From assembly GCA_907165135.1 (NCBI GenBank), contig OU015566.1:12400001-12464000 (forward strand): DNA of 64,000 nt, in the 5' to 3' direction. Positions 3,816 to 40,457 of the stretch are shown here, in pieces (the first letter of the stretch is position 1; each line of letters starts with the position of its first letter). A program made the position numbers and the translations under genes. The notes beneath the pieces were generated by a model. The model was not told the DNA's origin, searched no databases, and saw only the letters and a program-made list of their open reading frames with translations. Origin of the DNA: Oikopleura dioica. Its lineage: Eukaryota; Animalia; Chordata.

Positions 3816-5470
3816 GAATCGGCCAAAATGAGAGAAAGGAAATGACTCATTTCAAATGAGGTCTCTTTTTTGAGAAAACAAACTTTGAAAGATGGCCGTT
3901 AAGGGTGTCCCCAACGATCGAGGTCGAGAGTGTCTAATTCGGTGACTCAAATTTTTCTTTTTATTTAGAAAATTCTGATTCCGAACCTTTTTTCAGATCT
4001 TCAATATCTTATCTACTTCTCGAGATATGGCTTTTTCTATGAGCGCGTTAATGCATTAGCCTTCGATAGAAATGCACTGTGAAAATGGCTATTTTGAAAT
4101 TCTCAATTAAGTGTAGCAAATTATATATCTCCTGAAAGCTTGAAAAATTTGCTTTCTGCTGATACCATTTTCAAAAAGATCCGATGAATTTTACTTATTG
4201 TAAGAGCGCGTCAAAACTCGAAAACACCTGCTCTTTGGCGCCGAAAAAGGGGATTAACCTACTTATCGGTGCATAATCTGAGCTCATGAGAGCCTTGTTG
4301 AAGGATCGAACTATGTTCAGACTGAAATTTGGACAAAAAAATCAAGCGAAAAGGGCCTTCAAATTTGGTTCAAATTTTGTTAAAATCATCAATTTATATA
4401 TTGTATATTTATATATACATTTGATAAAATTATAAAAAATCTGTCTCGATTAATGCAGAGAGAAGTGTTCAAGCAACATGATTCTTTTCGAAATTTGAAA
4501 TTTGAACGAGAAGATTTCAAGAAAAACGATCTCAAAGTTACCCGAGATTACAGAAGTCGACCTTCTTTGAAGCGGCGGTAGGGGATTAACGGATCAAAAT
4601 TTACGAAATCGGTCTCGATTAATGCAGAAAGAAGGGTCCAAATAATAATATTCATATTGATTTTTTATGTAAAAACTATCCGATTAGTAGAATTATTAAC
4701 TCAAAGTTGATCCTGTTTCAAAAAAATCGTTGGGGACACCCTTAAGATTGGTCTGGTGAAAAGAAACGACAAAAACTACAAGAAGAATCTTGTTTTATTG
4801 CAGTAAGGAAGATAAGGAAAAGTAAATGTATTTACAGAAACGGAATTTGTGTTTGGTTGGAAGGACTCCCAGCGAGAGGTAGCGCAAAAGGAATGAGACT
4901 GATGAAAGCTTGGAATTACAGGAAGTACGCCCAGGTTTGCGGTAACTGCTGGGAATAATTCCGTGCAAGGGTTTTCAAAAAGCCCATTTGGGTTGAGCTG
5001 GGAGTCTTTCAATGACGGAAAAGGCTTTGGTGAAGGCGTGTGGAGTTGAATTCATGTAGTAAGTATAAGTAGTAGCACAAGAAAGAGATAAGGTTCGAAA
5101 TATAACGAGAAAGCAATATGAAACTTTACTGAAAATTTCATAACTTCATAAAATGGGTGATATTTTTACACAGACCGAAAAGATCAGCATTTTCGACTCT
5201 CACTCATCAGGATCATGATGATTTGAACAAAGAGGGTTGAAAATGTTGAAGATTTCGTTCTTAGCGCGTGTAGAAGGGAAATAACTATCCAATTTGGGAT
5301 TTTGGTGTAGCCAAAGCGCGGCTAGAATTGTCCAAAAACGATAGGGTCACAGTTTTTTCTCATTCTTCGAAAGAAAAATGCCTCGAAAGGGTCGGAGAAT
5401 TTTTCATTCAGAAAAAATCATTGAGTTTTTATGCCTATTGATAAAAGGCGGGGATGAATCTTTTGGAGGA

Positions 5471-8400
5471 TTAGTTGCCAAGAGGATTAGTGGGAACTCC
5501 AATAGCGAAGTTGTCGCAAGCATCATTACAAGGAGAACCTGTCATGTCGTCCTCGGCGACGCAGACCTGGATGTCGCAGTGGACATGGACGGTCGAGTTG
5601 GTCATTGGCTGGTGGTTCTCATCGATAAACTCGAAGACGGTGTACGAGTATCGATCGAAGTCCTTGGCGGCGCAGGTAGCGGTAGAACTGAACTCTTGCC
5701 AATTACAGTAAATGCTGGAGAACTTACGTTGCGTCAAAGTAGAACGGTTCCCATCGTTCGATGCCTGTGAAAGGCTCTGGGTTATTTCCATTGGTCCAGA
5801 GATTGTAGTCGAGGGTCAAATCGTTGTTCCAGACGGTGCACTTGGTAGCACGGAAAACAGTGTTGGAAACAGATGGGTTCTAAAAACGAATCAGTAACGT
5901 AAATTTGTCTTTGAGCTAAATTACCTGAGTGATAGAGAAGTACATCTTCTCTCCGACTCGGAATGGACCAACAGCTGGCTCAGCAAAGGCATCAGAAGTG
6001 TAGAGATCGAGCTGGAAGGCGAAGGTTCCGATGTTCTCGCCATCATGGGAAGCCATGGTACTGGTAACATTGACGTCGGTATCACCGATGTTGACATTAG
6101 CGCTGTAGACGCAAGAGAACTCCTGGTTCATTCGAGTCTTCATGTTGATCTTAGCGTTCATGTCGATGCCGGATGTGATTGCATTGGTGAAGGTGATGGT
6201 CTCGAAGACATCATCGTAGGCGACAGTGGTTCCGCACTCGTCAAGTTTGACTTCGACTCGGTATCGATCACCCATGGGAACGATGTGGTAGCTAGTCTCG
6301 TTACAGTTCGAGTCCAAGAGGTTGAGATCTTCGGCATTGGTGAAGTCAGCAGCGCTGAAGTAAGCAACCATTCGGTCGGGGTAGCATTCCATTCCAGTGA
6401 GATCTGGAATTGGCTCGCAAGTATTGAAGGAGGTCAGGAACTCGCCATCTGGGCACTCGCAGTATCCAGCGGGGTTACAGACGTCGGTGCATCCTCCGTT
6501 GTTGACGGAACAATCCCAAGATGGTCGTTCGCAAACGAATCGTGCCTTGGTAGTGCAAGCTTGAATGACGTACTTGTCGGTAGAATAGTCCCAGAATAAG
6601 CAATCTCCCACGTTGAGAGTAGCACCAATAAGGTTAGACTGAGCTTGTTGGATAGCATTGTTGATGGCGGTAGCAATCATGGAAATGCTACAGTCTGGGT
6701 CGCCAGGAGTAGCAATCCAGCCGTTGTTGGCATCAATGTAAGCACCAATTGGTGTCTGGGAAAGGGTATCAGTGCAAGTGACACCATCGAAGAAGCACCA
6801 GTCGGTACCTGCATCGTTGACTTTGTAGCCAGTGTAGACTGTGTCGGTGATTCCTGGTTCAAAACCGTCTTTTTCGATCTGCCTGAGTCGACCGTGGGCC
6901 TTGCTCCACACGTTCATGTACTCACTGCAGTCGGTATAAGAAGAAGCGGGAGTGTACATGTCGACTTCTTCGTTGAACAATTGTCCACCATGAGCCAAAC
7001 AGACTGCAGCAGCAGTTTCGAAGTCTTCTTCCTCGACGGAGATACCAGTGTCGATGATGAGACCTTGCTGGTTGGAAACTTCAGTGTACTGGTTTCCGGT
7101 ATCAGAGTCCCAAACGATGGTTGGCTGATTAGCTCTGGCGATGTAGCTGTCGAGAGCGATGAAGTTTCCATTCCCACAAGTGACGGTGTAGTCGCTGAAG
7201 TAGCAATCAAATCCTCCCTGGTTGGTGTATCGAGAGGTAGCAAATCGCTGAGTAGCATCGTTACATGCATATTTCTTGCCAGATTGAATGAGGCCGTAAG
7301 GAACTCGGAAATATTCCTCGCAGAGGATGATTGTTACACCCTTTTTGAAAGCATGGAAGTTCAAGTTGCTAAAGCTGGTAAATGGCTCAGGCGAGATGTA
7401 AATATCGTGGTTCAGGTCGAACTGGGGTCGGAAGAGCCAACCAGTTGGATAGCCTGTGAAATCACAGATAGTACCATCCCCGTTGACGTCGTCGAATCCG
7501 TCGGGACAGACGCAGCTGTATCCAGGATCCAAGTTGGTGCACTGAGCGGCGACAGAGCAAGTGTTGTCAGCGCATTCGTCGACGTCGGAGCAACCGCCAT
7601 TGACATCATCGTAGCCGTAGCCTTCCTGGAGACATTCACACAAGAATGTACCTTTGAAGTTCTTACAGGTACTGTCGGCAGTACATCCACCATCGTTAGT
7701 AGCGCACTCGTCGATGTCAACACATCTATGGTTGATGATATCATATCCATCATCACAACCGCACTGGTAGCTAGAATACGAGTTGACACATTCTTCGGTT
7801 GTTGCGCAAGCATGTCCAGTACCCTCGCCCAAACACTCGTCAGCATCGACGCACTCGTTGTTCTCGTAGATGAATCCATCGGGACATGGCTTGTAGCTCG
7901 CAGCATAATTGAGTACGATTCCGTAGTTCTGAACGAGATCATCGGTGATCAAACCCATTCGGAGCTCGTAGGTTTGCGAGTTCTGGCCGGCGTAGTCACC
8001 AAGATTGTTGATGCCGAGGAGACTATCGTAGTTGTAGTCGTAGTCGACATTGGTGGGATCAGCGAAGGCATCATCGAATCCGCAGAATGGGCCGATGGCG
8101 TTATCATCGGCGTCAAAGATGTAAACCTAGATAAAACAGAAATTGTTTTGCATTGGCAGCTTACCTGGTCGTGTGAGCAGAGACCGTCGTCAGAGTGATC
8201 GACCTCAAACTCAGCGAAGCTCCAGTCCACATGAGTGGTCATATTACCTTCAGAATACCGTGAAAATTATCCCAAGATTACACATGACAGCTTACCCGAC
8301 AGAGAAACCCGAAAAGCATAGACGGAATTTGCTGCGTAGTGGTGTGGTGTGGAAAGTTGCCCAGCGACGTTCGCATCCCTAGAAAGAGTTCAATTGAAAA

Positions 8401-23700: not shown

Positions 23701-26410
23701 GATTCCTGGTCAACTTGGTCCAATTGGTTCAAAAGGGCTGAAAGGATATCGAGGAAAAGAAGGCGGCGATGGACCAGTGGGATTTCCCGGACCAAAAGGG
23801 ATTAAAGGGTTACCTGGCGAGAAGGGTATCAAAGGAGTAAACGGTCCAGCAGGGATATTCGGCCTTCGTGGTGAACCTGGTGCAAAAGGAGATGTTGGGC
23901 CAAAAGGACACATCGGTACTCAAGGTGAAGAAGGCGGAATCGGCGAAGAAGGAGATCCTGGGCCTATTGGTTTACCTGGAAAGCGAGGAAGACGCGGTGC
24001 ATGGGGTAAACCAGGCCATATCGGTTTCAAAGGTGAACCTGGTCTCGTCGGTGGGCCTGGACCACAAGGCATTCAAGGTCATCCTGGCCCTCTCGGCGAT
24101 CCTGGTCCTCAAGGTCCGGTCGGCCGTAAAGGTGCTGCTGGCCCTCCTGGTCTTACTGGAGAAAGAGGTCGAGTTGGACTCACTGGTATCGAAGGTAAAC
24201 CAGGTCTCAAAGGCGAGCGGGGAGTATCTGGCCTCATCGGTACAGCTGGCGAGAAAGGTTTACCTGGCCCAGAAGGATATATTGGGATGCCCGGTGGAGT
24301 TGGCTTTCGTGGTGATCTTGGTGATAAAGGCGAGCCCGGGCCACCTGGTTTTCCTGGCGCGACTGGTCCGAAAGGCGAGGAAGGTACTCCTGGAAGGCAA
24401 GGACCAATGGGAATCTCCGGAAATCAAGGTACCTTCGGCGACCCTGGCCATATTGGACTTCACGGAAAAGCAGGTCCTCTCGGACCAACAGGTGTTCCTG
24501 GTCGAACTGGTGATCGCGGTGATCGTGGAATAAAAGGAAAACCAGGTCCACAAGGTCCTGATGGCAAACGTGGATTCATTGGCATGACTGGAAATCTTGG
24601 TCCAAAAGGCAAACTCGGACCACGAGGTGCTGAAGGATTCAAGGTTAGATAAATCAGAATTTCAGTCGAGAAAAATAATTATTTAGGGTCAAGTCGGATA
24701 CCCTGGCATTCCAGGAGCTCCTGGTTTAGCTGGAGCTCGAGGTCCAAAAGGACAGACTGGTGATGCCGGCCCTGATGGCCTCACTGGACAAATTGTAAGA
24801 TTTCTCATATTAGCCGAGTCTTATTATATATTCAGGGAGCACAAGGTCCTCGCGGTCTGAAAGGACCCCCGGGTAAACAAGGGGTTACCGGTGGATTTGG
24901 TCGTCCAGGACCACCTGGCATCAAAGGTGAAAATGGACAAGTGGGAATCCCAGGCCAAATTGGCATGACTGGCGATCCGGGTTTTCCTGGTCAGCCCGGT
25001 TTTCAAGGTCCTCCTGGTGAGCGCGGCGAAGCTGGAGAAAAGGGCCTAAAGGTAGTATCTTTTTAAGCGTATAATTTCATGATTATGATAAGGGTTTCGA
25101 AGGACAACAAGGCTACCCTGGAATCACTGGCTTGTACGGACGAAAGGGAGAGCCCGGCTCGGCGGGTCGAATCGGTCGCGAAGGTCGAGTTGGTTTACCT
25201 GGAAGAAATGGTCCACACGGTATTCAAGGAGATCCCGGACAGCCTGGATATATCGGCGCTCCCGGCTTGAAAGGAATTCAAGGGCATCCAGGTCTTCCAG
25301 GAAGATACGGACCCATGGGAACGATCGGCATGCAGGGGAAAACTGGATCAAAAGGCGACTACGGTGATGTCGGCGAACTTGGTCACCGAGGTGCAGTTGG
25401 CAAGACAGGCCCGAGAGGAAGAGATGGCCAAGAAGGCCCGAGAGGTCCAAAAGGATCGAAAGGAAAACTTGGCAAAAAGGTTATATTTTTATTGATAAAC
25501 TTTCTGATAAAATTTCAGGGCATGAAAGGTGTCCGTGGAACTTTTGGACCCGAAGGTCCACAAGGGCGACAAGGACCAACCGGTGACAGAGGAATTCAAG
25601 GAATATCCGGGCTTGAGGGACCAAGAGGAGATCCCGGGCTTCCCGGACCGCCTGGACCACCCGGTGCTCAAACTGCATCTTATTCGTTCGATAAAATGTC
25701 TTACCAAAACGTGAGAATATTGCCTGATCCTGAAAACTAATTGTTTCAGGACATGTTCGTCGGAGTAAAAGAGGATCTCGTAGACCTCAAACGCCATATC
25801 CGACGCTTTGCCAGCCCTAATGGCGCTGAAAAAGATGAAGCCGTCCAATCTTGCGCCGAACTAGGACCGAAAGCTTATGGTCAAAAAGTAATCGATCCCA
25901 ACCAGGGCCATAATGGGGATGCTCTGATTGGCGAATGTTTTGTCCAAGATGATTTCGTCTTAACCTGCTTTTCCTTCGACTTTGAAGATGGTGTTCATCC
26001 AGAAATCAAGGTTAGTATTTTTTTATTATTTGAAAATATGAAGTATCTTTAGCTGACGGCAAGTCAAATGAAAATCCTGGGAATACTGTCCTCCAAAGTC
26101 ACTCAAAAGTTCAACGTCTCCTACTTGGCGGCGAAGCTCTGTACAGATTCAAAAACGATACAAGTCGCCAATTTCTTGCATTATTTGAGCGATTCGAAAA
26201 TCGCCGCTTTATCACTAAACTGCCGCAAAACCAAGTCTAAGGTTTGACATCAATTTTTCTATGTCAGAGAATAGAAAAATTTAGGATTGGGACGAAGAAA
26301 TTTTCCGATTTGAGTCGCCAACAAAACTTCCAATTGGGCGATTAAAATGGCTCAATGGCTTTTCTCCCAACCGCAAATTCATAAAGGAACTGGTCGTTCG
26401 ACTTGAATAA
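20783..26410 (+). CDS. Fibrillar collagen alpha chain (TSPN-like N-propeptide, ~310 Gly-X-Y triplets, divergent COLFI); first exon tentative
   Basis: Signal peptide [24 protein letters not shown]. Gly-X-Y run from 22655 to ~25668 over 5 exons. C-propeptide motifs [37 protein letters not shown] and KLPI. Confidence 0.92.
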
Positions 26411-28566: not shown

Positions 28567-31506
28567 TTAAACAGTTGGAATATCTAGTTTTCCATCAAGT
28601 CTAACATTAGCAGCTGAATGAAGTTTGAGGTGATCAATGGAGTGAATGCAAGAATTGCAGTAAATCGATTTCGGACACATTGGGCACTGTTGGCAAGGGA
28701 AGGGTTGCCCTTGCTCTGGAGGGAAAATGGTGATGCGACAGGAACTGCAAGCCATTGAAGGAATATCGGGTTTGGTGTCGATCGGAGATTGCTGGCTGGT
28801 GAGGGGGGAAGAGGTGATTGAATCGAAGGAGTCCGTCTGGTCCATTTCAGTGATGGTCATTTCGTCAGAAGGTTCTTCCTTGATTTCAGCAGTGGGGAGG
28901 TTTCTAATTGAAATAATAAGACCCGCTGCTTCATTTGGGTAAGGCTTACTTACCCTTGAAGATTTTGCAAGAACGGCAAGAGCTTAGAAATCGCTGCTGG
29001 GTCTGATTGTAATTGAAGTGAAAGGAGCAATTGAAGATGTGCTTTGAGATCGATGCCGGGCAAATTGGCGAGATTCGATAAATTTGGTGATGAAGAGTTG
29101 GGGCTTGAAGCGCTGCTAGAGGCGGTCGGAATTGACGAGGTTTTGACTTGAATCGGGGCGAGTGTGCTGGAAGTGGTCAGCTTCTCGACCGACTTAGGCG
29201 TCATCCGGAAATTGCTGGAAGCAGAAGCGGGTGAAAGAATCGTAGGAGCGATAGAACTTGGTGCCGGCGCAAGTTTGGGTTGCTTGCTTGGAGGACCGTT
29301 GTAGTGGGTCATGGTCAGACCGTTAGCTTTTGCAGTTTTCTCGAAGTTTTTCTTGCGATTTCGCCGTCGGGGAGTTTCCTGCGTGTTTTCGGAGACTACT
29401 CGATGTTTCTAAAATTTAATTTGAAGCCAATAAAAAATTTCTTAGATCTTACCCCGTGAAGTGACCAGTAGAGCGCACACGAATTACAGGCGAGTTTGCC
29501 TGTGTACTGGGGAAAATCGCGTTGAGCGACAAGACCAGGCCTCTTGAGTTCGATTTCTTCCGGGCTCTTTATTCGTCTCCAGAGGGTCGCCGTATTCGTT
29601 CCGCAATTGATGCAAATATTCTTTGAGTTTTTCTTGGCTCCCCCGCGGCGAGATGCTTCTGTCGCTTGTGGGGTAGAACTTGAAATAGTTGGTGTTGCTT
29701 GGACGACTGTGGCATTTGTCGTGAGTGGAATCGAGCTAGTGGGAGACGAACGGGAGCTAGGGATTACTGACACGGCTTGAACCATTGAAGGAAGGCTATT
29801 TTTGTTTCCGGACATCCAGCTCATCTTTTCCATCTCGTTTCCACTAAATTAGTTGATGAAGAAAATTATTCGTCGGGTTTTAAGGGCGCTAGACATGACA
29901 AAGTCTGGAGAAAATTATCGGGCGCGAGCCGGTTATCGAATTACAGACGTTAATTTCTCGTCCCGGTCTTAGTTAGGCTCACATGACTTACGTTGAGGAT
30001 TTTGGCGTCGTCGTGGCGATCGTCACGGGAGTCAGACGCAGAACGTTCTTTGACGCGAGCAGCTTTGAAAGTTGAGCTTGTTGGACGCCGTTCAAATTGT
30101 TCGTGTTCTCTTGCGTCTTCTGAGTGTTGTTATTCTTTGAAAAATCAGCTTTTCTTACCGGTTGATCGCCGTTTGACACGATAAGCGACATGTACTTCTG
30201 TAGATCTGACTGACTGACGTTGTATTTCGCGACTAATTTCAACATGAAACCAGGGTCGCTTTTTCCTTTCGCTTCCTGAATAATTCAATCAAAATCAAGT
30301 TCAATCTATCTTCATTTGATGATCATTCGATTAACTCTTTAACTACCTGTAGGAGCTGCTTGATCCTCTTGATCGTAGAAAGTGGGAGCTTTGTGACTGG
30401 GCAAACGTACGCAGCGGGATTGATTGATTCTGTCTTCCATGTTTTCGGCATCGTGACTTTACCAGTTGTCGCTAAAAAAAGCAATAAATATATGAAAGAT
30501 GAATAAGAGTAGCGGCTTTCTACCTGTTGAGCTGGAACTGGTGTCTCTATACATATTGAAATCAGACGGTTTGATGCTCCACTTCAAGCAGAGCTCGTCC
30601 AGATCTGCGCCTGGATTTTCTTTGAGCTCGTTGTTGATCGCTTTGACTCTGGCGACTTTCTCCTCTTCGGATAGTTTGAGCTGCCTGCCAGGAGCTTGCG
30701 AGCGCTGGCTAGCACCCTAAAAGATTAGTTAGCGTCACCGTTATTTATATAATCGCCCAGATAAGATGAATTTTATGTAAATCTTACTTCTGCTGGCACG
30801 ATCCTCATTGATTCGTACATCAGGAAATTTGAAAATTCAAAGAGATCTCTGTTCATCTTTATGTAGCCATAGTTCTTGAGGTGTTTCGACCTCGTCGTTT
30901 CGTAACAGAATGTACAGACAGATTTAGTCCCGTCGTAGTTGACAAAGCACTCTTTCTTGGCATAGTTGAATGTGCAGCCGACGCAACGAACACTCCCAGG
31001 AGCATTTGTTTGGGTGGATTTGACATGAGCTCGGGCTTTCCAAGTTAGGAAGTCAACTAGAAAAATGACTAAGGCGTCGAGATGATGATCCTACCTTTGT
31101 GGATGTTGTGATGCACTTGCAGCAAATTCTCATCCTCAAAGGATCGGTCACAAACATGGCAAATGTACTCATCTTCATCGATCTTCAAATTTCCTTCTTC
31201 ATCCGAATCTGTATTAGTAATTTCTAGTGACCCTTAGATTGAGTTCATGAATACCAATTTCTGACTCAGAAATAAATTCTGAGGATTGTCTACAGCTGCA
31301 GAGTAGGAAAAGAACATCCTGAAGGCCTACTGATAGACATGGATCGATTCATAGACAAAATATTGAACTCTTCCTGAATCATCGGATTTTGACCTGCTTG
31401 AAATTGAGGAATCAAGGACGAGATCTTCTGGCGACTGTGGTTGGATAATCATGTAGTCAGCAGGAGACTCGCCGCGAGGACCGGCTGGTTGAACTGATAC
31501 AGACAT
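28567..31506 (-). CDS. Multi-domain nuclear protein: C2H2 finger, C4 finger, two HTH-like modules, GATA-type finger with expanded loop, C-terminal ZZ-like finger
   Basis: YICHVCDRSFEDENLLQVHHNIH (~31095-31165); CVGC-x19-CTFC (~30900-30985); LSEEEKVARVKAINNELKENPGADLDELCLKWSIKPSDFNMY and LKLVAKYNVSQSDLQKY; CINCGTNTATLWRR..CNSCALYWSLHG/KHR..RRRNRKK; CSSC..CQQCPMC..CNSC..H. Confidence 0.8.
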
Positions 31507-31589
31507 GCTGGTAGCTTCGTTTCAATTTTCTAGAGAATAGAGATTAGTATACAAAGGTAAATCAAAGAAGATCGGCTCTCCTCGTTGTT

Positions 31590-34500
31590 TGCTCTTTATC
31601 ACTTTGGTGCGATATCAAAAACGAAGCGTGAGAGAGCCAAAGAAAACGCATAAGGATTTATCATTTAGCTTCACATGACTACCCCAAAAAGACGGGACAA
31701 TTAAAAACCCCGACTTTTAATAAGACAGTGGAGGAGTATATTGAGTTGTTTTGACAATGTCTGATTTATTACGACAACAAGGACTTTTCAAGTACTTTTT
31801 TGTTAAAACAACTTCTTTAGATGAAAAAATTTTGTTAAAAAAACTTGTCACTCAATGATTTACAAAGTAACTTGGCCTGATAAAATCACAAAACAACAAT
31901 AGAAAACCTCCGCCAAGGGCTAAAGCGTCCAGCAGGTGAGCTGAGGAGATAATGAGGGCCTAATTTAGTCAAAAGAGGCTCTTTGTTTTCTCTCTTTGAG
32001 CGAGACAAAAAACGGCTACGTCCGTGAAATTGCGTTTCTCGATAAGAAAGAAGGAAAAAAGGAGCGAACTACCGAAGTGTTCAGTTCCAAACTCACACGC
32101 TCGGGGCTCTCTATCGATCGTGGCTCTTATCATCTTGCTGATCGATTTTTTCGGCGATGCAGTAACTGGTAAACTAGAGTTTGGAAATAGAACATAAGGG
32201 TTGAATCCATCGAAAAATCAGGAAAAAAAGACAAGATTCTAATCAATTATCGAGTCACGCTTTTTGCCACTGATAAGTTTTTATCATTTTCGTTATTTTC
32301 CAACCAAGCGGAAAACAAAAACTCGTAACGATCGTCATTTCCTGCCGCTTGTAACCGTGGTGATGGGTTAACGCCCTTATCAGTGTGTTTTTTGGCGTGG
32401 CAATGGCGCAGGATTTCCGTCTTCCTGCTCAGTTATCAATCTATTCATTACTGATACGGTAGTTTACTGCGTATAAACCGGTATATAAAGTGGAGATACT
32501 GATAAGAGGTATATACTGATAAGACGTTATGGATCAACTTTCATATAAGCTTATAAAAGTAAGAAATTGAATGATTATTCAATCCAAAAAATACTACTCA
32601 TAAAGCTTTAAAAAGGTGATAAGAAACTCTCCATACCGTTGTGTAGTCTTTCTTCTTTCAGTTCAGCTCTCTGTCGTTAAAATAAATGAGGAAAATGCCA
32701 AATAAGGATCTCCCCCGCTCTGCGACTGATATGGGAGCGTAAAAATTTCAACTTTTGTTATGCTTTTTTTTCTTCGTTTGTGTTAGAAAATCATCTTCCT
32801 GTTTGGCCTCGGCGCGTCACGGCTCGATATCTCGGCCAGAGTTCTCTCTGATATTTTTTTTCTTTATCTTTGTTCTTATCTCAAAATTGGAGATTTGGAA
32901 CTGGTGCCCCTTCGGTCTGGCGGAGGCTCCGTTCGAGGGTTGGAAAAAATAATGGTCGAGTGGGGTGCCGAGGAGCCGATAGAGCGCGTTTTATTGAATC
33001 CGTGAATCAATAAAAAACGGCCTTTTATCACTGAATAAACCAAATAGGGCGCCCCGCGCGTTGAGAGTGAGCGAGAGAGAGAGAGAAAGAGTAGGACGTA
33101 GGCACATGGAAGAAACAGACGAGAGTGTGTCGACTCTACGCCAACACACCAAACACACCGCACTTATCATTAGCTCGCAGCGGGCAATGCTACAACACCA
33201 CTAGCGACTCACCAAAATCCGAAGCTATTATCATCGAGCCGTTTTATGGCGCGCGCTCTTTTTTTCTGGAGAAGAATCATTAATGCTTATCAATTCATGG
33301 TTTTATTGAGATCTTAGATCTATTTATGTAACTCTAGTCATGAGAATATGAATCGGAAGGATAATATTTCTTGAGCGAATCCAAACAGAAGGGACAAAAT
33401 CGAAGGTCTCCAAAAATTTGAAAATTCTTGCTCAAAAAGAGCCAAATTTAGCGACAAATGAGGCGAAGCTTCGCTTCGCTCTGAGTCTTTCTTTGGCGAA
33501 GATTCGCTTCGCTCATCTTTGGCTTTGGAAAGTTTCACTTGCTGTCCGTAGTTTGCTATGATTTTGAAGCAAAGTGGGACATGTTCTATCGTTATTTGAG
33601 CAGCACAACCTATTTCCCTTTTCATGCTTGTTTTGTTGGAAGGAGCGGACTATTTTTAAGAGATTTGTTTTGTGTCAAATGGACGATTGAACTCCTAAAG
33701 GCCTCGGAGCTTCGCTTATTCAAACACAGACGGCGAAGACGGCAAACCTGATCAAAGCTCAATAGTGATAGCGCGCTGTTTGCGGGACCCTCCATTCACA
33801 ATTCACTATTGACAGTACTGATCTCAGCGAGGTACCGGCCGCGCATGGAATCGAATTTCTAGCGGATCAAAAGCTAAAGTTTGGAGCTGGCTTTCTATCA
33901 TTCAAATTCTCCTTCGAATAATGAAGTCGTCATCTTCCCACGACGGGATTAGGGTTAGTTCTTTAATTGTTTGTAAGAATTATTCAGCATCACAGTACTC
34001 GAAGTGTGGTTATTGCTCGCCTCGTAAATACGAGCTCTTATCAGAGACTCACGGCGTAATTATGCACTATTGAATATAATCAATCATCCATGAACACAAT
34101 CTGCTTATCTTATGTCATTTTATATTTGTTATTAGTGCAGTGTAGTTTAACCAATAGTAAATTAATTATTTCAACGATGAAGACTCTAAAATGAAATCTT
34201 GCTGGAATTAAACTTTTATCAGTAGACTTAGGATCCACACTAGACGACCTACTTTGACTGTCTTTTTTCTTTTGATAAAAATAAAAACGAAGGTCAAAAA
34301 AGATTGGATAAAAACGATTTCCTTGGCTTTCTTCGCCGAGTTCTTGTTTGCCTGCCCTTTCGAATTTTAATTCACCATTTTAGTGATAAAAGCAAAGTCG
34401 TAAAGCGTGGCGCTCCACACTCCTTTGGAAAGGAGCGTTTCGTTTTTTGGATATTATCACGGAGGCAGGGCTTTTTTTGTTTTGCGAGTTGTCTCCAACC

Positions 34501-36040
34501 GTCTCAAGTGGGAGCAAATCCAGCGCTGGGAACGGGATTGTCATTTATGGTCAATATTGTCCTTCTTTTTCTACCAGCCAGGATTCAAAAAATGATAAAA
34601 GGAATCCTCCATCTGGGATCCCAAGTTGACACTGTCGAAAATAAATCTAATAGACAGCGTATCAACAAAACAGTGTAAATACTTTTTCATGAGCAGTAAA
34701 ATAGAACTGATTTGAAAAGACTTACTTTTGAACGAAGTTTTCTTTGTTGAAAAAATCTCTAATTACGGCTATTGGAGCTCTTAATCCGGTTTCTTGAAAA
34801 TTGGAATCGATAAAAAACAACAGGGGCCGGGGAAATTATAATCTTATCAGTCTCGGAGCGACGGGAGTGATGCCGAGCGCAGCGGGATATCTGAGAACGG
34901 AATCAACTGATCAATAAAAGCTCTATTTACTGCTGTTTGCTTAAATAAATATCCGATAAGAGCATTTTTCTTAGACTTGATGGATGAATTCGGAGCTTTA
35001 CAGATTTAGTTTAATACTTTTTCCTCGTGACCAAAAATAGATGTAGAAAAAGAAGTTCTTCAATCAGACACTCGTGAGACCGAATATGGAAGGAGAACAA
35101 CTTGATACCCTTCATGATTGTAATGAGGCTCACTTATCAGTCTCGATCGCGATAATAGCCCCAATCAATATAATTTTCCATCTTCGAATTTAAAAATATA
35201 CTGTCGGGCAATATAATACAGAGAGCTTTCTCGGGCGTTCGAAAAAGAGGGAGAGGAAATGTTATGTAATAAGAAAACCACTTGGAAATCGTTATCTCTA
35301 ACTTACCAGTATAGTAAAGTGGCGACATTTGGTTTAAAACTTGGGGGACAAGAGAATCTCTAGAGGCCCCTCATGAAGTACTGTTGCGTAAGTTTTACCG
35401 ATAAGAAATCTTATCTAGAACTTCTACTGGAAGTCTCTGACTCCACTTAGGTAATCACCTGTTGATAATTGTTGAATGAGCGCGAGAATCGTTGATTCTT
35501 AAGAGAGTCGTCTCCGCGTCGCTACTCTCTCTTATCACTTATTGATGCTCACAAGTTGCGAACAGGATCTTGCGACGGGTTTTCTTGAGACCACTGATCA
35601 GTTAGCCCGCGCAGTTCCAAGTGGTGGCGCCACATAAAGACATCGATGTGAGTCACTCATTGAGATTTAGAGGTGTGTGGGTGCTCCAACTCCTCACGTG
35701 GTGCTGCCAGTGATAACGGCCGCTCGATAAACGACGGCTCGCGGCGTGTTGCCCCGGCTCGGGCATTCAGGCACGCACGCGCCACAATGCCTTCTACCAC
35801 ACCACACATGATAGGGTGCGCACGCTAGTGTACTCTCACCCTAGCTTCGTAGGAAGACAACGAAGAAGTGACATTCAGTCGCGATTTTCCAAGCTCTTTA
35901 TCATTCTCCTACCTACTCATCCATCATCAAACATGTCGCAAAGCTGAGACTCACTATTTTTATTGCATGTCGGTAAAAGAATGTCTGACAGCTTTATTTC
36001 AAGTTTTTTTTACCGCGAGATGACGGGAATAAGGATAAGA
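31590..36040. promoter_or_regulatory. GATA-site-dense divergent regulatory region
   Basis: Manual count gives about 43 GATAA/TTATC, 19 GATAAG/CTTATC and 7 CTGATAAG/CTTATCAG in ~4.45 kb; no convincing long ORF in the region. Confidence 0.7.
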
Positions 36041-36209
36041 GGCCGCTGAATTTACAAATTGTCAATCAAGACAACTAATTTTCGCTGCGAAGATGGTCAG
36101 CTGGTAAATTGTCGGAGTTTCTCATTCGATAATCTGAGAAATTTGCACATGCTCAGCAATAATAATTCGGAGCAGGATTCATCCCGTCCTCAGAAGAGCA
36201 CAAAAAACC

Positions 36210-38496
36210 ATGAGGGTAGGCAAGTTTTCAAATTTTCACGGCGTCAATTTATTTTTTAGGTTCTTCCATTCCTCCTCGCGGTCATTTCCGCTCAAGAATG
36301 TTCCTCCGGAAGCAAGGATCTAACACTCACTCCAGGCGCCACTGGCGAAGACGTCGCCCGAGCAACAATCGCCAAAGTGTGGCAGGTCATCGCAACCTGG
36401 GACTCAAAATACGAAGAGCGTGATTTCTTCCTCCGATATGCCTACGCCGAGACCAATTATGGAGTCGTTATCGTCCACGATGTCCAACAAATCTGGGCAC
36501 TCAGCGAGGAGCAGTTCAAGACGGCCCAGAAAGCGCCCATGGTTAGCAGAGTCTCGAGCGAATTCAACGTCAATTTCGCCGCGCTGGAGTTTGACGAAAT
36601 GAATATACCTACCTACTCGATGCTCGCACTCTTTTTGCTTCTCGATGACATGAATGTCTTCCCGATTCCATTCTCCATCGACGACCAAGCTACCATCTAC
36701 GCAAGTGTAACGAGCAACACCCTGGACGAGTTCAAAGATAGCGTCAACGACCTCGATCAAATCACCCAGAACGAATGTTCCTCCAAATCCCTCGATATCA
36801 TTTTCTTAGTCGACGAGTCCGGATCGGTCGGAATCCAGAACTTCAACCTCATCAAAAACTTCCTCGTCGATTATGCATCTGACAGTAACATCGCTGCCGA
36901 TGCTACTCGTATCGGTGTCCGACCATTCTCCAGCTCAACTTATCTCTATTTCGCCCTGGATGACTATAAGACCAAGAACATCATTCATGAGCTCCAAAAC
37001 ATGCCCTACAATGGCGGTGGAACTGACACGGCTACTGGACTCGATGCTGCTCTCGGCGATTTCGGAAATGACCGACCTGAATCTGTAAAGTTCTTGGTTA
37101 CAGTCACTGACGGTGCTAGTAACTCTTTTGACGCAACTAAAGCGGCCGCTGATCGAGTGAAGGCTGACCCAAGAAACATTCAATCCTTCGCCATCGGTGT
37201 TGCTGGAGCGAACATGGACGAGCTCGAAGCCATTGCTACATCCAAAGACAACATTTACATGCTCAACGGCTTTAGCGACTTCGATCCAATCAAGAACAAC
37301 CTCCAGAACAAAATCTGCGAGGGCAACGTCGAGAACAACAACGGTGGCGACTCGCAAATCGGTGGCAGCACCAGCCAGCCAGGCAAGCTCATCATGAAAC
37401 TTGGAATGTCGGGCAAGGACAACTTTGATGTCAAATCTACTGGCCCATTGACATTCTACATTTCCCGAACCAACCCACAACCCGGACCAGCCGTTTACGA
37501 CAAGACCTTCGAAATAACCACTTCCAACTTGAACACGTGGGTTAATCAAAACGTCGGGTCTGGCCATCAATGGATCTACCTCGGCGCCTACAACTACAAG
37601 CCAAGTAAAGCACTCATCTCTCTGAACATCAACTCTGGCGGCGCGACTTCCCCAGAGGATCCGGATCCAGTCGTCTGTCAGCCAAACGCGCAATGTGTTG
37701 GCGGCACTTGTCAGTGCTTTGACCAGTATGCTAACATCGATGGCGAATGTGTTTTCGATCGCTGTGCGAGTGCTAATTGCTTCAACGGGTACGAATGTGC
37801 TCCTGATACGGGCGACTGCTACTGTCCAGAGGACCATCTTGAGCTAGATGGAAACTGTTACGCTGCAGAATGTCCGGAATCAGTTGTTGAAGTTCATGTA
37901 AGTTTTGCCCGCTAGAATTCAATACTAAATTAGTATTATGCTATCAGAACAACGAATTGGGATACGCTACTGGGGAAATCACCTCTCCCTGGTTCGAGCA
38001 CGGTGCTGAATATCCTCACAACTTCGACTGTACTTACGAGTTCGAGACAATCAGAGCTGAGGGAAGTTGTTATGAAGTCATTCTAGAGCAACCGTTTGGA
38101 ATTGAAGCATCGGCGAACTGTGAAAACGACCGTCTGGAAATCTTTGGCGTTTTAAATGCCGATCAAGGTATTTCAACAGCACTTTTTCTCACAAAAGTTA
38201 ATGATTTAGTAAATATGGATCACTACTTCGAGCGTGATTATGACACAGCCGTTCTTTGCGGTCGAGCCTGTACTGCCGAGACAGGATGGGTAGGCAAGGT
38301 GTGCGGCAATCACTTGAAAATTCGATTCCGCTCCGACCATATGGTCAGCGACATTGGATGGAAAATCAAATGGATCTTGAGACCAAAGGAAGACTGCGAC
38401 TGCCACTGCGAAGAATGTGACGAGTGGGATGGCGAGTATCCAATGTGCGACTACAAAAATGTTAGACCAAAGAACCGAAATCCTGGCAATAAATAA
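36210..38496 (+). CDS. Secreted protein: lysozyme-like N-domain - VWA - unknown beta-rich domain - 2x EGF - CUB (oikosin-like)
   Basis: ATGAGG micro-exon plus signal VLPFLLAVISA; VWA with intact MIDAS (DESGS, GGTDT, VTDG); EGF repeats; CUB (ITSPWF..YPHNFDCTY, FRSDHMVSDIGWKIKW). Confidence 0.85.
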
Positions 38497-38505
38497 TATA
38501 TTTAA

Positions 38506-39471
38506 TCAAAGTTCTTTGTAAAATCGAATCAGCTTCATTCGACTGAACCAAATAAAGAAATCAAAAAATTGTTTCTCGAGAAATCTTGTCCTTCCAATCG
38601 TTGGGAAAGGGTGAAGCTCCCAATCGTAGCCACATTTTTTGTAGAACTTGATTGCAGGATATTGAGGAGTTGTTGCCTCAAACACAATTAATTTTATACC
38701 TTCTTCTTTCGCTCGTCTCTCCAAATCGCCTAGATAAATAGATAGCTAATATTTCAAACTAATAAAAAAGGTCTTACTTAACATTTTTTGCGCGATTCCG
38801 AGTCTTCTTGCGCTGTGCTTCACGCACATTGAAAACATCTCCCAGGATTTATTTTCTATTTTCACTCCCTGTAAAATTTACAGTGTAAATCTATTCAGTC
38901 TGATGTGTTCCGTAATATTTTATTCAACAAAACTTGCCTTGAAGTGAGTTATCTCGGGTTTATCCAAAAAACCAACTGTCCCCAAAATCTCATTGTTTTC
39001 TCCTTCAGCAACAAAAAAGTTCTTTCCGTAGCGCTTTTTGATTTCCAACATGTCTGTCCTGGATTTGACGTAGTCGTTGTTCGATGTTTCAATCATGAGT
39101 CGCAAGTATAAGAGGAAAATTCCAGACGGGAGTATGGAAAACAAAATTGTTTGAAAAATGGTAGAAGCAGGACAAATATAGTGCACAAAAGCGGGTATCA
39201 TCAAAAAAATTACGCGAACATGATGTTGATTTGAAAGCCAAGCGTACATTCCCCTATGAAAATGTTAAATACTTCGAGATAAACCTTGACTTATTGCTTG
39301 GTAACATCGGGGGAAAACGGATTCGGTTGGCCCAACTCCCGCAGAGTGTGAACGTGCAGGAGGTGTCAAGCTGAGTGAAGGAGATGCAAGGAGATCAACT
39401 GCAATCCCATGCTGCCAGATTTCGTAAGCCGAATGTTGATCTTTTTCTTTAAACTCTCTTATTATTATCAT
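38506..39471 (-). pseudogene. NAT8/camello-like acetyltransferase, copy 3; exon 1 disrupted by an ~88-nt insertion (probable pseudogene or N-truncated form)
   Basis: Exons 2-4 are intact and homologous to the other copies. Exon 1 diverges after GIAVDL and has TAA where two paralogs have TGG just before the donor. Confidence 0.6.
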
Positions 39472-39622
39472 TACAAGTTCGGCGAGTTCATGTATTCAAA
39501 GTCGAACGAAGAAGCTTTTTGGCACAAAAATGAGAAAAATCAATAAAACATAACATGTTATGATTGAGTAGTCGACAATTAACGCTATAAAAAGAGAATC
39601 AAATGATACCAATTTTAATATT

Positions 39623-40457
39623 TTAGATTTTTTTGTAAAACTTAATAATGTTCATTCTGCAGAACCAGAAGAAAAAATCGGCAATCTGCCTCTCAGGAAA
39701 TTTTCTGCCAAGCGTCGGGAAGTTTTCAAGCTCCCAATCGTAGCCGAATTTCTTGTAAAATTTAACAGCAGGAACCTGGGGCGTTGAAGCATCAAAGACG
39801 ATTACTTCTACGTTTTCTTTTCTTGCTCTCATTTCCAAGTCACCTAGAAATTCCAGAAAAATACGGATAAGTAGACAGAATACCAAGCAATTTATGAGCG
39901 ACTCCCAATCTTCGAGCGCTGTGTTTGACGCTCATGGAAAACATCTCCCAAGATTTTCCTTCGATTTTCTTTCCCTTGGAATCTGTAAGCTCCATGTTTA
40001 ATTTCAAAATCTACCTTGAAATGAGTGATGTGTGGTTTTTCAACATAAACGATCGTTCCTAAAATCTCTCCATTGTCCCCTTCTGCGACGAGAAATCGCT
40101 TTCCATGATGCGTCTCAATGTCGAGCATGTCTTTTCTGGATTTGACATAATCTTTGTTTGTCAAATGTACCATTAGCCGCAAGAAAGCAAGAAGAATTCC
40201 AGAAGGAAGAGTCGAGTAAAACAGCCCTTGCAAAAGACTCGTCGAAAAGCCAAGGTGATGGACAAAAACGGGCATCAAAAGAATAATAACGCGTATATGA
40301 TGTTGATTCAAAATCCAGTCCATCTTGTCGCTTCGATTTAATAAGAAGCTTCAGAACAAATAGTTACCCAGTGCTTGTTGAGATCAACGCTCATTCCGTG
40401 CTTCCAAATAGCAAAAGCAGCATCTTGATCTTTTCGTTCGAATTCTCTAACTTTCAT
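39623..40457 (-). CDS. NAT8/camello-like GNAT N-acetyltransferase, copy 4
   Basis: MKVREFERKD..IWKHGMSVDLNKHW/MDW.., RFLVAEGDNGEILGTIV, GKKIEGKSWEMFSMS, PAVKFYKKFGY; all introns GT-AG and in frame. Confidence 0.88.

What the first reader, a model, noticed from the sequence alone, without database searches (positions are those of the whole stretch)
31590..36040. Dense GATA-site array directly upstream of the aberrant GATA factor: candidate autoregulatory enhancer system
This is the largest intergenic region between recognisable genes in this part of a very compact genome. By hand count it has ~43 GATAA/TTATC (about 14-15 expected at 60% AT), 19 GATAAG/CTTATC (about 3 expected) and 7 CTGATAAG/CTTATCAG (32270, 32376, 32499, 32516, 34037, 34843, 35133; about 0.2 expected). 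It also has exact longer repeats: CTTATCAGTCTCG x2, ATACTGATAAGA x2 and CCGATAAGA x2. Other non-coding stretches (46-52 kb) looked close to background on a partial check. Autoregulation through clustered WGATAR sites is established for GATA1/2 and ELT-2. Here the same array could also drive the divergent secreted VWA gene and the flanking NATs, forming a self-contained GATA circuit.
Basis: partly seen in the sequence, partly recalled or inferred. Interest (0 to 1): 0.8.

Follow-up and report, generated by a model that had tools for sequence, protein, structure and literature searches.

The report
Conserved GATA-site array upstream of GATA-like gene
A real, evolutionarily conserved field of about 44 TGATAA-type binding sites fills the 4.7 kb upstream of an unusual GATA-like transcription-factor gene in the tunicate Oikopleura; it is most likely that gene's enhancer region, a well-known kind of element, and whether the gene regulates itself through it remains untested.

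Summary
In 31590-36040, TGATAA occurs 27 times against about 3 expected and is the most enriched 6-mer. The enrichment is specific to T-GATA-A (6x); AGATAR and GATAG are at background. Site flanks share one consensus, A-N-T-GATAA-G-A.

The organism is an Oikopleura (appendicularian tunicate), not a nematode. In the Bergen O. dioica orthologous locus the same array lies upstream of the orthologous GATA-like gene (42 GATAA, 11 TGATAAG in 5.1 kb). The two upstream regions are collinear through at least 11 conserved non-coding blocks (67-92% identity, one with about 120 identical bases). At least 18 of 44 GATAA cores are positionally conserved (p = 4e-5), and lineage-specific sites are enriched too.

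The Bergen locus has no VWA gene, so the array belongs to the GATA-like gene and not to a GATA/VWA/NAT circuit.

The neighbouring protein has a true GATA-type finger split by a conserved 21-residue insert. Binding to these sites is plausible but untested. Four canonical Gata1/2/3 paralogues exist in this lineage and are equally good or better candidates.

Verdict: a conserved homotypic GATA-site regulatory domain, a new member of a known kind. Autoregulation is open. Unchecked earlier notes of this scan report similar GATA-site fields beside a GATA gene and Friend-of-GATA elsewhere in this genome.

The parts
31507..36209 (.). Whole divergent intergenic region between the ATG of the GATA-like gene (31506, minus strand) and the ATG of the VWA gene (36210, plus strand). 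It is the conserved regulatory domain that holds the array.
   Evidence: Start codons were fixed by tblastn of P0052/P0022 and by the spliced signal-peptide match to P0001/P0004. The region holds 44 GATAA, 27 TGATAA and 12 TGATAAG, i.e. 9.35, 5.74 and 2.55 per kb, against 2.43, 0.71 and 0.10 per kb in the rest of the window.
31596..36038 (.). The GATA-site array. It has 43 GATAA cores (20 on plus, 23 on minus) at a mean spacing of about 100 bp. The flank consensus is A(-3) N T(-1) GATAA G/A(+5) A(+6) G/A(+7).
   Evidence: Site list and flank frequencies are: A at -3 is 58% vs 29% elsewhere, T at -1 is 63% vs 29%, A at +6 is 60% vs 30%. TGATAR is 6.0x enriched, AGATAR 1.2x and GATAG 1.1x. There is no excess of close pairs.
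32041..32622 (.). Densest sub-cluster, 0.5-1.1 kb upstream of the GATA-like gene's ATG. It has 10 GATAA cores in 582 bp, including 4 of the 7 CTGATAAG and the ATACTGATAAGA direct pair.
   Evidence: It partly overlaps conserved block B6 and the 32007-32151 block.
31932..32151 (.). Conserved non-coding blocks. B7 is 31932-32015 (92% identity to L004 9418-9498). The second block is 32007-32151 (72% to L004 8407-8537). Conserved GATA sites lie at 31948, 32041 and 32127.
   Evidence: blastn. The two blocks abut in the window but are separated in L004 by an 889-nt insertion that is specific to one haplotype and free of GATA sites.
32256..32401 (.). Conserved non-coding block B6 (79% identity), with the perfectly conserved site CACACTGATAAGGGCGT at 32377.
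   Evidence: Bergen-type RNA reads land here, and their loose ends match L004 exactly.
32718..33200 (.). Conserved non-coding blocks B8 (32718-32836, 79%) and B1 (32932-33200, 89%, with about 120 nt of perfect identity). Conserved sites lie at 33025 and 33164.
   Evidence: There is no coding signature: mismatches are even across codon phases and indels are 1, 3, 5 and 13 nt. This stretch has the highest partial RNA read depth.
33606..33807 (.). Conserved non-coding block B2 (87% identity), inverted relative to its neighbours when the window is compared with the Bergen-type sequence.
   Evidence: blastn strand, confirmed with L011. Alignment.
34335..35805 (.). Distal conserved blocks: B3 34335-34568 (79%), B4 34797-34931 (84%), 35103-35189 (74%), 35527-35548 (91%) and B5 35590-35805 (75%). 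Conserved GATA sites lie at 34385, 34454, 34809, 34844, 34955, 35134, 35532, 35712 and 35726. B5 also keeps a CACGTG and a TGACTCA motif.
   Evidence: B5 aligns to L004 4946-5151, about 100 bp from the end of the Bergen NAT gene.
28570..31506 (-). The GATA-like zinc-finger gene. It has an N-terminal C2H2 finger, a C4 finger, a long-loop GATA-type finger with a basic tail, and a C-terminal Cys-rich region. It is about 64% identical to O. dioica Bergen CBY21357.1 (P0052, 744 aa).
   Evidence: Exon pieces, tblastn, Pfam, accessions.
29477..29614 (-). CX2C-X38-CX2C GATA-type finger. It is a canonical GATA finger split after LWRR by a conserved 21-residue insert.
   Evidence: The spacing and most loop residues are invariant in 10 homologues. 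The two halves align to the GATA-1/GATA-3 C-fingers and their basic tail. Only 34 relatives were found among 1.8 billion representatives. The top 19 PDB fold matches are all GATA fingers.
36210..38496 (+). Divergent neighbour: a secreted VWA + CUB protein gene. Exon 1 is 36210-36215, followed by a 44-nt intron at 36216-36259 and then the signal-peptide exon. On present evidence it is not part of the conserved unit.
   Evidence: Pfam VWA 3.4e-29 and CUB 3.4e-07. Homologues P0001 and P0004 are at 65% and 57%. N-terminus. The gene is absent from the orthologous Bergen loci L004 and L012.
38920..40323 (-). Two N-acetyltransferase ORF pieces (38920-39249 and 39892-40323). Their Bergen homologue directly flanks the array's distal end.
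   Evidence: tblastn gives 50% and 74% identity to L004 4149-4466, inside the called Acetyltransf_1 gene at 4013-4849.

Best explanation
The 4.7 kb between the two start codons is the conserved cis-regulatory domain of the long-loop GATA-like zinc-finger gene on the minus strand. It consists of a collinear chain of constrained non-coding blocks. Through these runs a homotypic cluster of about 44 sites of one specificity, (A)NTGATAA(G)(A), in both orientations and without fixed spacing.

Inferred mechanism: many moderate-to-strong sites for a GATA-type DNA-binding protein with a strict T-GATA-A preference together recruit that factor. They set the tissue and level of transcription of the GATA-like gene. 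Site number is kept by selection while individual sites turn over.

The reader of the sites is a GATA-family protein. My split is about 55% one or more of the four canonical Gata1/2/3 paralogues, about 30% the gene's own product (autoregulation), and the two may coexist.

Shown: enrichment, motif specificity, conservation of sequence, sites and density, independence from the VWA gene, and the non-coding nature of the blocks. Inferred: enhancer function, the target gene, and the identity of the binding protein.
For: - Enrichment and a single extended motif.
- Not a repeat, not a known RNA family.
- The same array sits upstream of the orthologous gene in Bergen O. dioica: L004 has 42 GATAA, 25 TGATAA, 11 TGATAAG and 5 CTGATAAG in 5.15 kb, against 0.23 TGATAAG per kb in the rest of that locus.
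- The same flank bias holds there: A at -3 in 22 of 42 sites and T at -1 in 25 of 42.
- At least 11 collinear conserved blocks at 67-92% identity. The protein is only about 64% identical.
- 18 of 44 GATAA cores fall in the same alignment columns, against 15% of all 5-mers and 12% of composition-matched 5-mers (p = 4e-5).
- Non-conserved TGATAA sites are still 4.5x enriched (P = 2e-6), which points to turnover under selection for density.
- A second Bergen haplotype (L012) is 1.2 kb shorter upstream. It keeps 38 of 42 GATAA and all 11 TGATAAG. The deleted DNA is depleted of cores (Fisher p = 1e-15).
- The conserved blocks show no coding signature.
- There is no VWA gene at the Bergen locus.
- Canonical Gata1/2/3a-d exist in appendicularians.
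- In Ciona, multimerised GATA sites are enough for tissue-specific expression, and Gata.a directly drives Fog.
Against: - There are no functional data: no accessibility, binding, reporter or expression data for this lineage.
- The RNA runs available were of a different O. dioica lineage, so nothing is known about where or when the gene is expressed.
- Only two lineages could be compared.
- A more distant relative's locus (L005-L008) shows no TGATAAG enrichment.
- Low-level RNA reads over the orthologous proximal blocks allow for an upstream exon or a non-coding transcript.
- TGATAA rather than AGATAA is not the classical vertebrate GATA1/2/3 preference (my own knowledge). The canonical paralogues are therefore not an obvious fit either.
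Confidence: 0.7

Rival explanations
1. Strict autoregulation. The long-loop GATA-like protein itself is the main reader of the array and maintains or limits its own transcription, as in GATA1, GATA2 or elt-2.
For: - The array is conserved together with this gene and not with its neighbour.
- Both finger halves and the basic tail align to the DNA-binding C-fingers of GATA-1 and GATA-3: LWRR, CNxC, LY, LH and RNRK are kept.
- The AlphaFold model's core has pLDDT 75-85, and its 19 best PDB matches are all GATA fingers.
- The insert is invariant across homologues, so the domain is under strong constraint.
- Appendicularians have lost Gata4/5/6. From my own knowledge, that is the GATA class usually linked with TGATAA-type sites, which would leave room for a replacement.
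Against: - DNA binding by an X38 finger has never been shown.
- The finger fails Pfam's GATA threshold: 12-24 bits against 26.8.
- The 21-residue insert lies next to the DNA-contacting hairpin.
- Four canonical GATA factors could read the same sites.
- Unchecked notes report similar GATA-site fields at a GATA gene and at Friend-of-GATA in this genome. That fits a shared upstream GATA factor better than a private loop.
Confidence: 0.3
2. Shared bidirectional enhancer. The array co-drives the divergent VWA/CUB gene, and perhaps the NATs, forming a self-contained GATA circuit.
For: - The VWA gene starts only about 400 bp beyond the last conserved block, and two GATA sites (35898, 36034) lie in that stretch.
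- An Okinawa VWA homologue has a modest TGATAA excess in its 3-kb upstream region: 9 TGATAA (3.0 per kb against 1.1 per kb) and 4 TGATAAG.
- NAT adjacency to the array is conserved in Bergen.
Against: - Both Bergen haplotypes carry the full array and no VWA gene.
- There is no sequence similarity between the array and the VWA-upstream regions in L001 or L002.
- The Bergen VWA homologue shows no upstream enrichment next to the gene.
- In Bergen the NAT gene faces the array with its 3' end.
- The gene pair is therefore not a conserved unit.
Confidence: 0.1
3. The conservation reflects an unannotated transcript, either an upstream non-coding exon or 5' UTR of the GATA-like gene or an independent lncRNA. 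The GATA words would then be secondary.
For: - Poly(A)-selected RNA reads from a Bergen-type animal land on blocks B1, B2, B6, B7 and B8, and their flanks match L004 exactly.
- B1 has about 120 nt of perfect identity.
Against: - Depth is very low, at 10-18 partly fitting reads per run, and first mates lie on both strands. Genomic DNA carry-over or enhancer transcription would look the same.
- An RNA function does not explain a 6-25x excess of one short motif in both orientations, or its enrichment among non-conserved sites.
- There is no Rfam match above threshold and no coding signature.
Confidence: 0.08
4. Chance, base composition or repeat amplification produced the motif excess.
For: The region is AT-rich (59% AT). 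An order-3 Markov model, which already encodes part of the motif, absorbs part of the GATAA excess: 33 expected against 43 observed.
Against: - The order-1 excess is 8-50x.
- Even under the order-3 model, TGATAA, GATAAG, TGATAAG and CTGATAAG each exceed every one of 300 simulations.
- No repeat families are present.
- AT-rich controls are at background.
- The array is conserved across lineages.
Confidence: 0.01

Closest known systems
Homotypic clusters of transcription-factor binding sites in developmental enhancers (a general class; named from my own knowledge of the literature)
   Same: Many copies of one short motif occur in both orientations with irregular spacing. They are embedded in conserved non-coding DNA next to a transcription-factor gene. 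Site number is maintained while individual sites turn over.
   Different: The size and purity are unusual: about 44 sites over 4.7 kb, in a genome where intergenic DNA is usually very short. Function has not been tested.
elt-2 promoter of C. elegans (TGATAA sites bound by ELT-2 and acted on by ELT-7)
   Same: A multi-kilobase upstream region of a GATA-type gene is rich in TGATAA. The extended word here (ACTGATAAGA) resembles the nematode intestinal site as I recall it. [quoted passage not shown]
   Different: The phylum is different, a tunicate rather than a nematode. The neighbouring protein is not a canonical GATA factor. In elt-2 the measured self-effect is negative and a paralogue compensates, so the analogy does not establish positive self-activation.
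Vertebrate GATA1 and GATA2 auto- and cross-regulatory elements ('GATA switch' sites; my own knowledge, not checked here)
   Same: Conserved WGATAR clusters lie around GATA-family genes and are read by family members, including paralogues.
   Different: The vertebrate elements are compact modules with a few sites, often combined with E-boxes, and they favour AGATAA. Here the field is far larger, is T-GATA-A specific, and lies beside a lineage-specific split-finger gene.
Ciona Gata.a-dependent early ectoderm enhancers (Zfpm/Fog, Efna.d, and the synthetic G12 construct)
   Same: This is a tunicate precedent that clustered GATA sites alone can drive tissue-specific transcription, and that GATA-network genes such as Fog are direct GATA targets.
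   Different: Those enhancers are a few hundred bp with 2-4 critical sites. Gata.a belongs to the Gata4/5/6 class, which appendicularians have lost.

Membership tests
Homotypic GATA-site cluster / GATA-responsive cis-regulatory module | Statistically significant local over-representation of the GATA motif relative to the surrounding genome and to composition-matched models | tested here: met
   TGATAA 27 against 3.3+-1.8 (order-1 model). It is the top 6-mer against the rest of the window (p 1.5e-16). The maximum in any other equal-sized window is 7.
Homotypic GATA-site cluster / GATA-responsive cis-regulatory module | Sites share flanking preferences consistent with one binding specificity | tested here: met
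   A at -3, T at -1, G/A at +5 and A at +6 are enriched about 2x over GATAA sites elsewhere. The same bias holds in L004. TGATAR is 6x enriched while AGATAR is 1.2x.
Homotypic GATA-site cluster / GATA-responsive cis-regulatory module | Evolutionary conservation of sites and/or of site density at the orthologous locus | tested here: met
   L004 has 42 GATAA and 11 TGATAAG upstream. 18 of 44 cores are positionally conserved (p 4e-5). Non-conserved sites are still enriched. Only two lineages could be compared.
Homotypic GATA-site cluster / GATA-responsive cis-regulatory module | Occupancy by a GATA factor and site-dependent enhancer activity | not testable with these tools
   This needs ChIP or CUT&RUN, ATAC and reporter assays.
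Autoregulatory element of a GATA-family gene (GATA1/GATA2/elt-2 type) | Sites lie in the regulatory domain of the gene whose product is proposed to bind them | tested here: met
   The array is collinear and conserved with the GATA-like gene and is independent of the VWA gene.
Autoregulatory element of a GATA-family gene (GATA1/GATA2/elt-2 type) | The gene product binds WGATAR | tested here: inconclusive
   Contact-residue motifs and the basic tail are kept, and the fold matches GATA fingers. However, the spacing is X38, the score is below Pfam's threshold, and there are no binding data.
Autoregulatory element of a GATA-family gene (GATA1/GATA2/elt-2 type) | Expression of the gene depends on its own product through these sites | not testable with these tools
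   This needs knock-down plus reporter or endogenous read-out.
Canonical GATA zinc finger (Pfam PF00320), for the neighbouring protein | CX2C-X17/18-CX2C spacing | tested here: not met
   The spacing is CX2C-X38-CX2C and is invariant in 10 homologues. No in-frame intron can remove the insert.
Canonical GATA zinc finger (Pfam PF00320), for the neighbouring protein | Score at or above Pfam's gathering threshold (26.8 bits) | tested here: not met
   The scores are 24.3 bits (window exon), 12.3 (P0052), 19.1 (P0022) and 24.5 (P0026).
Canonical GATA zinc finger (Pfam PF00320), for the neighbouring protein | GATA-finger fold with recognition helix and basic tail | tested here: met
   The 19 best Foldseek PDB matches are all GATA-1/2/3/4 or AreA fingers, at rmsd about 2.5-3 A over about 60 columns. 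E-values are weak (0.03 and above) for so small a domain. The halves and tail align.
Shared bidirectional enhancer of a conserved divergent gene pair (GATA-like / VWA) | The gene pair stays linked to the element across lineages | tested here: not met
   No VWA sequence is found in L004 or L012. The VWA homologues lie at unrelated loci L001 and L002, without the GATA-like gene.

The most novel reading that the evidence does not exclude
The lineage-restricted split GATA finger (CX2C-X38-CX2C) is a working DNA-binding domain with a strict T-GATA-A preference. It reads its own 44-site array, which locks in its own expression. In appendicularians, which have lost Gata4/5/6, this new family would have taken over the TGATAA-type input that Gata.a/Gata4/5/6 provides in other tunicates. 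It would act together with the other GATA-site fields reported (unchecked) at a GATA gene and at Friend-of-GATA in this genome.
Probability: 0.2. Interest if true: 0.7.

Novelty: new member of a known kind. Interest (0 to 1): 0.45.

Why it matters
Oikopleura has the most compact and most rearranged chordate genome known. Its cryptic lineages differ by thousands of rearrangements. A 4.7-kb non-coding domain that stays collinear, keeps about 40 sites of one motif and holds blocks better conserved than the adjacent protein is therefore a clear, ready-made candidate enhancer. It is well suited to reporter work in this species.

It also offers a direct handle on two open points:
- what an appendicularian-specific split GATA finger does;
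- which factor supplies GATA-type input after the loss of Gata4/5/6.

The kind of element, a homotypic GATA-site cluster beside a transcription-factor gene, is well known, so the result is useful but not surprising.

Tried and rejected
1. Nematode/ELT-2 reading. This was my first guess from TGATAAG and the look of the splice sites. It was rejected when the VWA ORF matched Oikopleura dioica proteins.

2. An in-frame intron to explain the long finger loop. The only GT..AG candidate is 29 nt and not a multiple of 3, and the loop is invariant in homologues, including a transcript-derived one.

3. Repeat or transposon origin of the sites. None was found.

4. Known RNA families. Only sub-threshold snoRNA-like hits appeared: snoR25 at 30.9 bits against a threshold of 50.

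5. A hidden protein-coding gene in the conserved blocks. Mismatches show no codon periodicity and indels are not multiples of 3.

6. RNA evidence for expression or a transcription start. The four runs laid were Bergen-type, since the loose ends match L004 exactly. Zero depth on the exons is therefore uninformative.

7. A third lineage.
- The metagenome scan with an invariant 26-mer returned only a Bergen-type contig.
- The P0018 and P0019 contigs are under 1 kb.
- P0022 is a transcript contig without flanks.

8. The distant relative's locus (L005-L008). It shows no TGATAAG enrichment and no GATA word among its top 6-mers.

9. A link between the array and VWA-family promoters. There is no sequence similarity.

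10. A literature search for the Bergen accessions. Nothing was found.

11. Preferential close pairing of sites, as a hint of double-finger binding. None was seen.

12. Substitution-level sparing of cores between the two Bergen haplotypes. There were too few changes to tell (2 of 200 against 80 of 3659, p = 0.19).

Full report
**Observation.** Window 31590-36040 holds 43 GATAA/TTATC, 19 GATAAG/CTTATC and 7 CTGATAAG/CTTATCAG at the stated coordinates, and only one further CTGATAAG occurs in the whole 64 kb. The three longer repeats exist and are unique to the region.

The excess is large against order-1 Markov simulations of the region itself:

| Word | Observed | Simulated |
|---|---|---|
| TGATAA | 27 | 3.3+-1.8 |
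| TGATAAG | 12 | 0.6 |
| CTGATAAG | 7 | 0.14 |

In an unbiased comparison of all k-mers with the rest of the window, TGATAA is the most enriched 6-mer (p 1.5e-16). The top 7- and 8-mers all tile one word, ACTGATAAGA. No other 4.45-kb window has more than 7 TGATAA, and the 46-52 kb non-coding stretch is at background.

The sites are not parts of a longer repeat or tandem array. The enrichment is confined to T-GATA-A: TGATAR is 6.0x, AGATAR 1.2x and GATAG 1.1x. Site flanks are biased as well:

| Position | Base | In region | GATAA sites elsewhere |
|---|---|---|---|
| -3 | A | 58% | 29% |
| -1 | T | 63% | 29% |
| +6 | A | 60% | 30% |

Orientation is balanced (20 plus, 23 minus), and close pairs are not over-represented. 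This is the signature of many independent sites for one binding specificity.

**Setting.** I first took the sequence for a nematode. The protein search corrected that: the 512-aa VWA ORF at 36377-37915 matches Oikopleura dioica proteins best, at 65% (Okinawa) and 57% (Bergen). The window therefore comes from an Oikopleura lineage that differs from both annotated genomes.

The region lies between two divergent genes.
- On the minus strand, at 28570-31506, is a zinc-finger gene with an N-terminal C2H2 finger and a GATA-type finger of spacing CX2C-X38-CX2C.
- On the plus strand, from 36210, is a secreted VWA+CUB gene. Its signal-peptide exon, after a 44-nt intron, matches the O. dioica homologues.
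- N-acetyltransferase ORFs follow at 38.9-40.3 kb.

**Comparative test.** This is the decisive part. The exhaustive protein search with the finger exon found only 34 relatives among 1.8 billion representatives. A full-length homologue (P0022) then led to the Bergen O. dioica orthologue P0052 (CBY21357.1) and its locus L004.

In L004, the 5.15 kb upstream of the gene carries 42 GATAA, 25 TGATAA, 11 TGATAAG and 5 CTGATAAG. That is 2.14 TGATAAG per kb, against 0.23 in the rest of that locus and 0.10-0.36 in about 130 kb of other control DNA. The flank bias is the same.

The two upstream regions are collinear through at least 11 blocks of 67-92% identity. The chain runs from beside the ATG out to window 35805, which matches L004 4946, about 100 bp from the end of the Bergen NAT gene. 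One block, B1 at 32932-33200, is 89% identical and contains about 120 consecutive identical bases. Another, B2 at 33606-33807, is inverted between the lineages. The proteins themselves are only about 64% identical.

The blocks are non-coding: mismatches are even over codon phases, and indels are 1, 5, 7, 13 and 14 nt.

In a global alignment, 18 of 44 GATAA cores occupy identical columns in both lineages (41%). This compares with 15% of all 5-mers and 12% of composition-matched 5-mers (p = 4e-5). At least one further conserved site (31948) is visible in the local alignment of block B7.

The sites that are not positionally conserved are still enriched: TGATAA at 3.2 per kb against 0.71 (P = 2e-6). 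Site number is therefore maintained while individual sites turn over.

A second Bergen haplotype (L012) has an upstream region 1.2 kb shorter. It keeps 38 of 42 GATAA and all TGATAAG and CTGATAAG sites. The two segments it lacks (350 and 889 nt) are almost free of sites (Fisher p = 1e-15). The 889-nt segment lies where two blocks abut in the window, so it is an insertion in L004.

**Which gene owns the array.** Neither Bergen haplotype has a VWA gene at this locus. There the array runs from the NAT gene's 3' end to the GATA-like gene.

The closest VWA homologues lie at unrelated loci (L001 Okinawa, L002 Bergen) without the GATA-like gene, and their upstream DNA shares no similarity with the array. 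The Okinawa copy does have a modest TGATAA excess of its own: 9 in 3 kb. Some GATA input into VWA-family genes therefore cannot be ruled out.

Even so, the array in the window is fully explained without the VWA gene. The proposed GATA/VWA/NAT circuit is not supported.

**Who reads the sites.** The finger of the neighbouring protein is a true GATA-type finger that has been split.
- Its N-terminal half (CxNCGTxTATLWRR) and its C-terminal half with basic tail (GKLACNSCALYWSLHG...RRRNRK) align separately to the C-fingers of GATA-1 and GATA-3. A 21-residue insert lies between them.
- The insert and the spacing are invariant in ten homologues.
- It falls below Pfam's GATA threshold.
- An AlphaFold model has a moderately confident core (pLDDT 75-85), in which the insert forms an extra short helix. 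Its 19 best PDB matches are all GATA fingers, with weak E-values as expected for so small a domain.

Binding to GATA-like DNA is therefore plausible but unproven.

Against a private self-loop, three points stand out.
- Appendicularians have lost Gata4/5/6 but keep four canonical Gata1/2/3 paralogues.
- Earlier unchecked notes of this scan report GATA-site fields beside a GATA gene and around Friend-of-GATA, and a second X38 finger gene, elsewhere in this genome. I could not test these. If true, they fit a shared GATA-factor input.

In Ciona, Gata.a directly drives Fog through GATA sites, and twelve multimerised GATA sites are enough for tissue-specific expression.

**RNA evidence.** The four RNA runs offered under the same species label gave no depth on either gene's exons and only 10-18 partly fitting reads. 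The non-fitting ends of those reads match L004 exactly at the orthologous positions. The runs are therefore of the Bergen/Barcelona type, and the absence of exon coverage says nothing.

The reads do show that the proximal ~2.3 kb of the orthologous upstream region appears at low level in poly(A)-selected libraries. That could reflect an upstream exon, enhancer or lncRNA transcription, or DNA carry-over.

O. dioica lineages are reported to have split about 7 and 25 million years ago, with extreme rearrangement since. I cannot say which split separates the window from Bergen.

**Conclusion.** The element is a conserved homotypic cluster of T-GATA-A sites embedded in constrained non-coding blocks. 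It most likely forms the regulatory domain of the long-loop GATA-like gene (confidence 0.7).

Autoregulation remains a live but minority reading (about 0.3). Co-regulation of VWA and the NATs is unlikely (about 0.1). The kind of element is well known, so I rate it a new member of a known kind, with moderate interest (0.45). That interest rests on its size and purity in a very compact genome and on its link to a lineage-specific split GATA finger.

Noticed in passing
window 29477-29614 (-); homologues P0018-P0026, P0052, P0053: The CX2C-X38-CX2C finger defines a very small family: 34 hits among 1.8 billion representatives. The 21-residue insert (IKSPEEIELKRP...) is almost invariant, even in relatives whose remaining sequence is only about 32% identical. 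The AlphaFold model puts the insert in a short extra helix.
   Followed up: partly
window 36210-38496 versus L004/L012; L001 10001-15034: The VWA+CUB gene is present beside the array in the window's lineage but absent from both Bergen haplotypes at the orthologous place. In Okinawa, homologues form a tandem pair at an unrelated locus. This is a gene-sized presence/absence difference right at the edge of a conserved regulatory domain.
   Followed up: partly
window 33606-33807 versus L004 7083-7284: A 200-nt conserved non-coding block (87% identity) is inverted between the lineages, while its neighbours stay collinear. This is a micro-inversion inside the regulatory domain.
   Followed up: partly
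L004 6603-6952 and 8530-9418: Two segments of 350 and 889 nt are present in one Bergen haplotype but absent from the other. The 350-nt segment is also absent from metagenome contig L011, and the 889-nt one has no counterpart in the window. Both are nearly free of GATA sites. Their nature, for example a mobile element, was not examined.
   Followed up: no
window 32179-32572 and 32770-33163; L004 about 7500-8310: Low-level poly(A) RNA-seq reads from a Bergen-type animal cover the orthologous upstream conserved blocks. This may be an upstream exon, enhancer or lncRNA transcription, or DNA carry-over. The 'joint' reported at 32836>32944 is explained by non-homologous sequence between the lineages.
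   Followed up: partly
window 32985-33020 (block B1) and 35590-35805 (block B5): B1 contains a perfectly conserved inverted repeat (TTTATTGA...TCAATAAA) next to a conserved TGATAAA site. B5 keeps a CACGTG E-box and a TGACTCA (AP-1-like) motif in both lineages. These suggest inputs from factors other than GATA.
   Followed up: no
L004 15000-16000: A secondary TGATAA peak (6 in 1 kb, 9 GATAA) lies just upstream of the RRM-protein gene that follows the GATA-like gene in Bergen.
   Followed up: no
window 34684-34755 (+): A weak C/D-box snoRNA-like match (snoR25, 30.9 bits against a threshold of 50, E 0.066). It is probably chance.
   Followed up: no
window 25132-25740 (+): A 202-aa ORF with a strong collagen triple-helix match (3.1e-29). 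It helped prompt my initial, wrong guess of a nematode.
   Followed up: no
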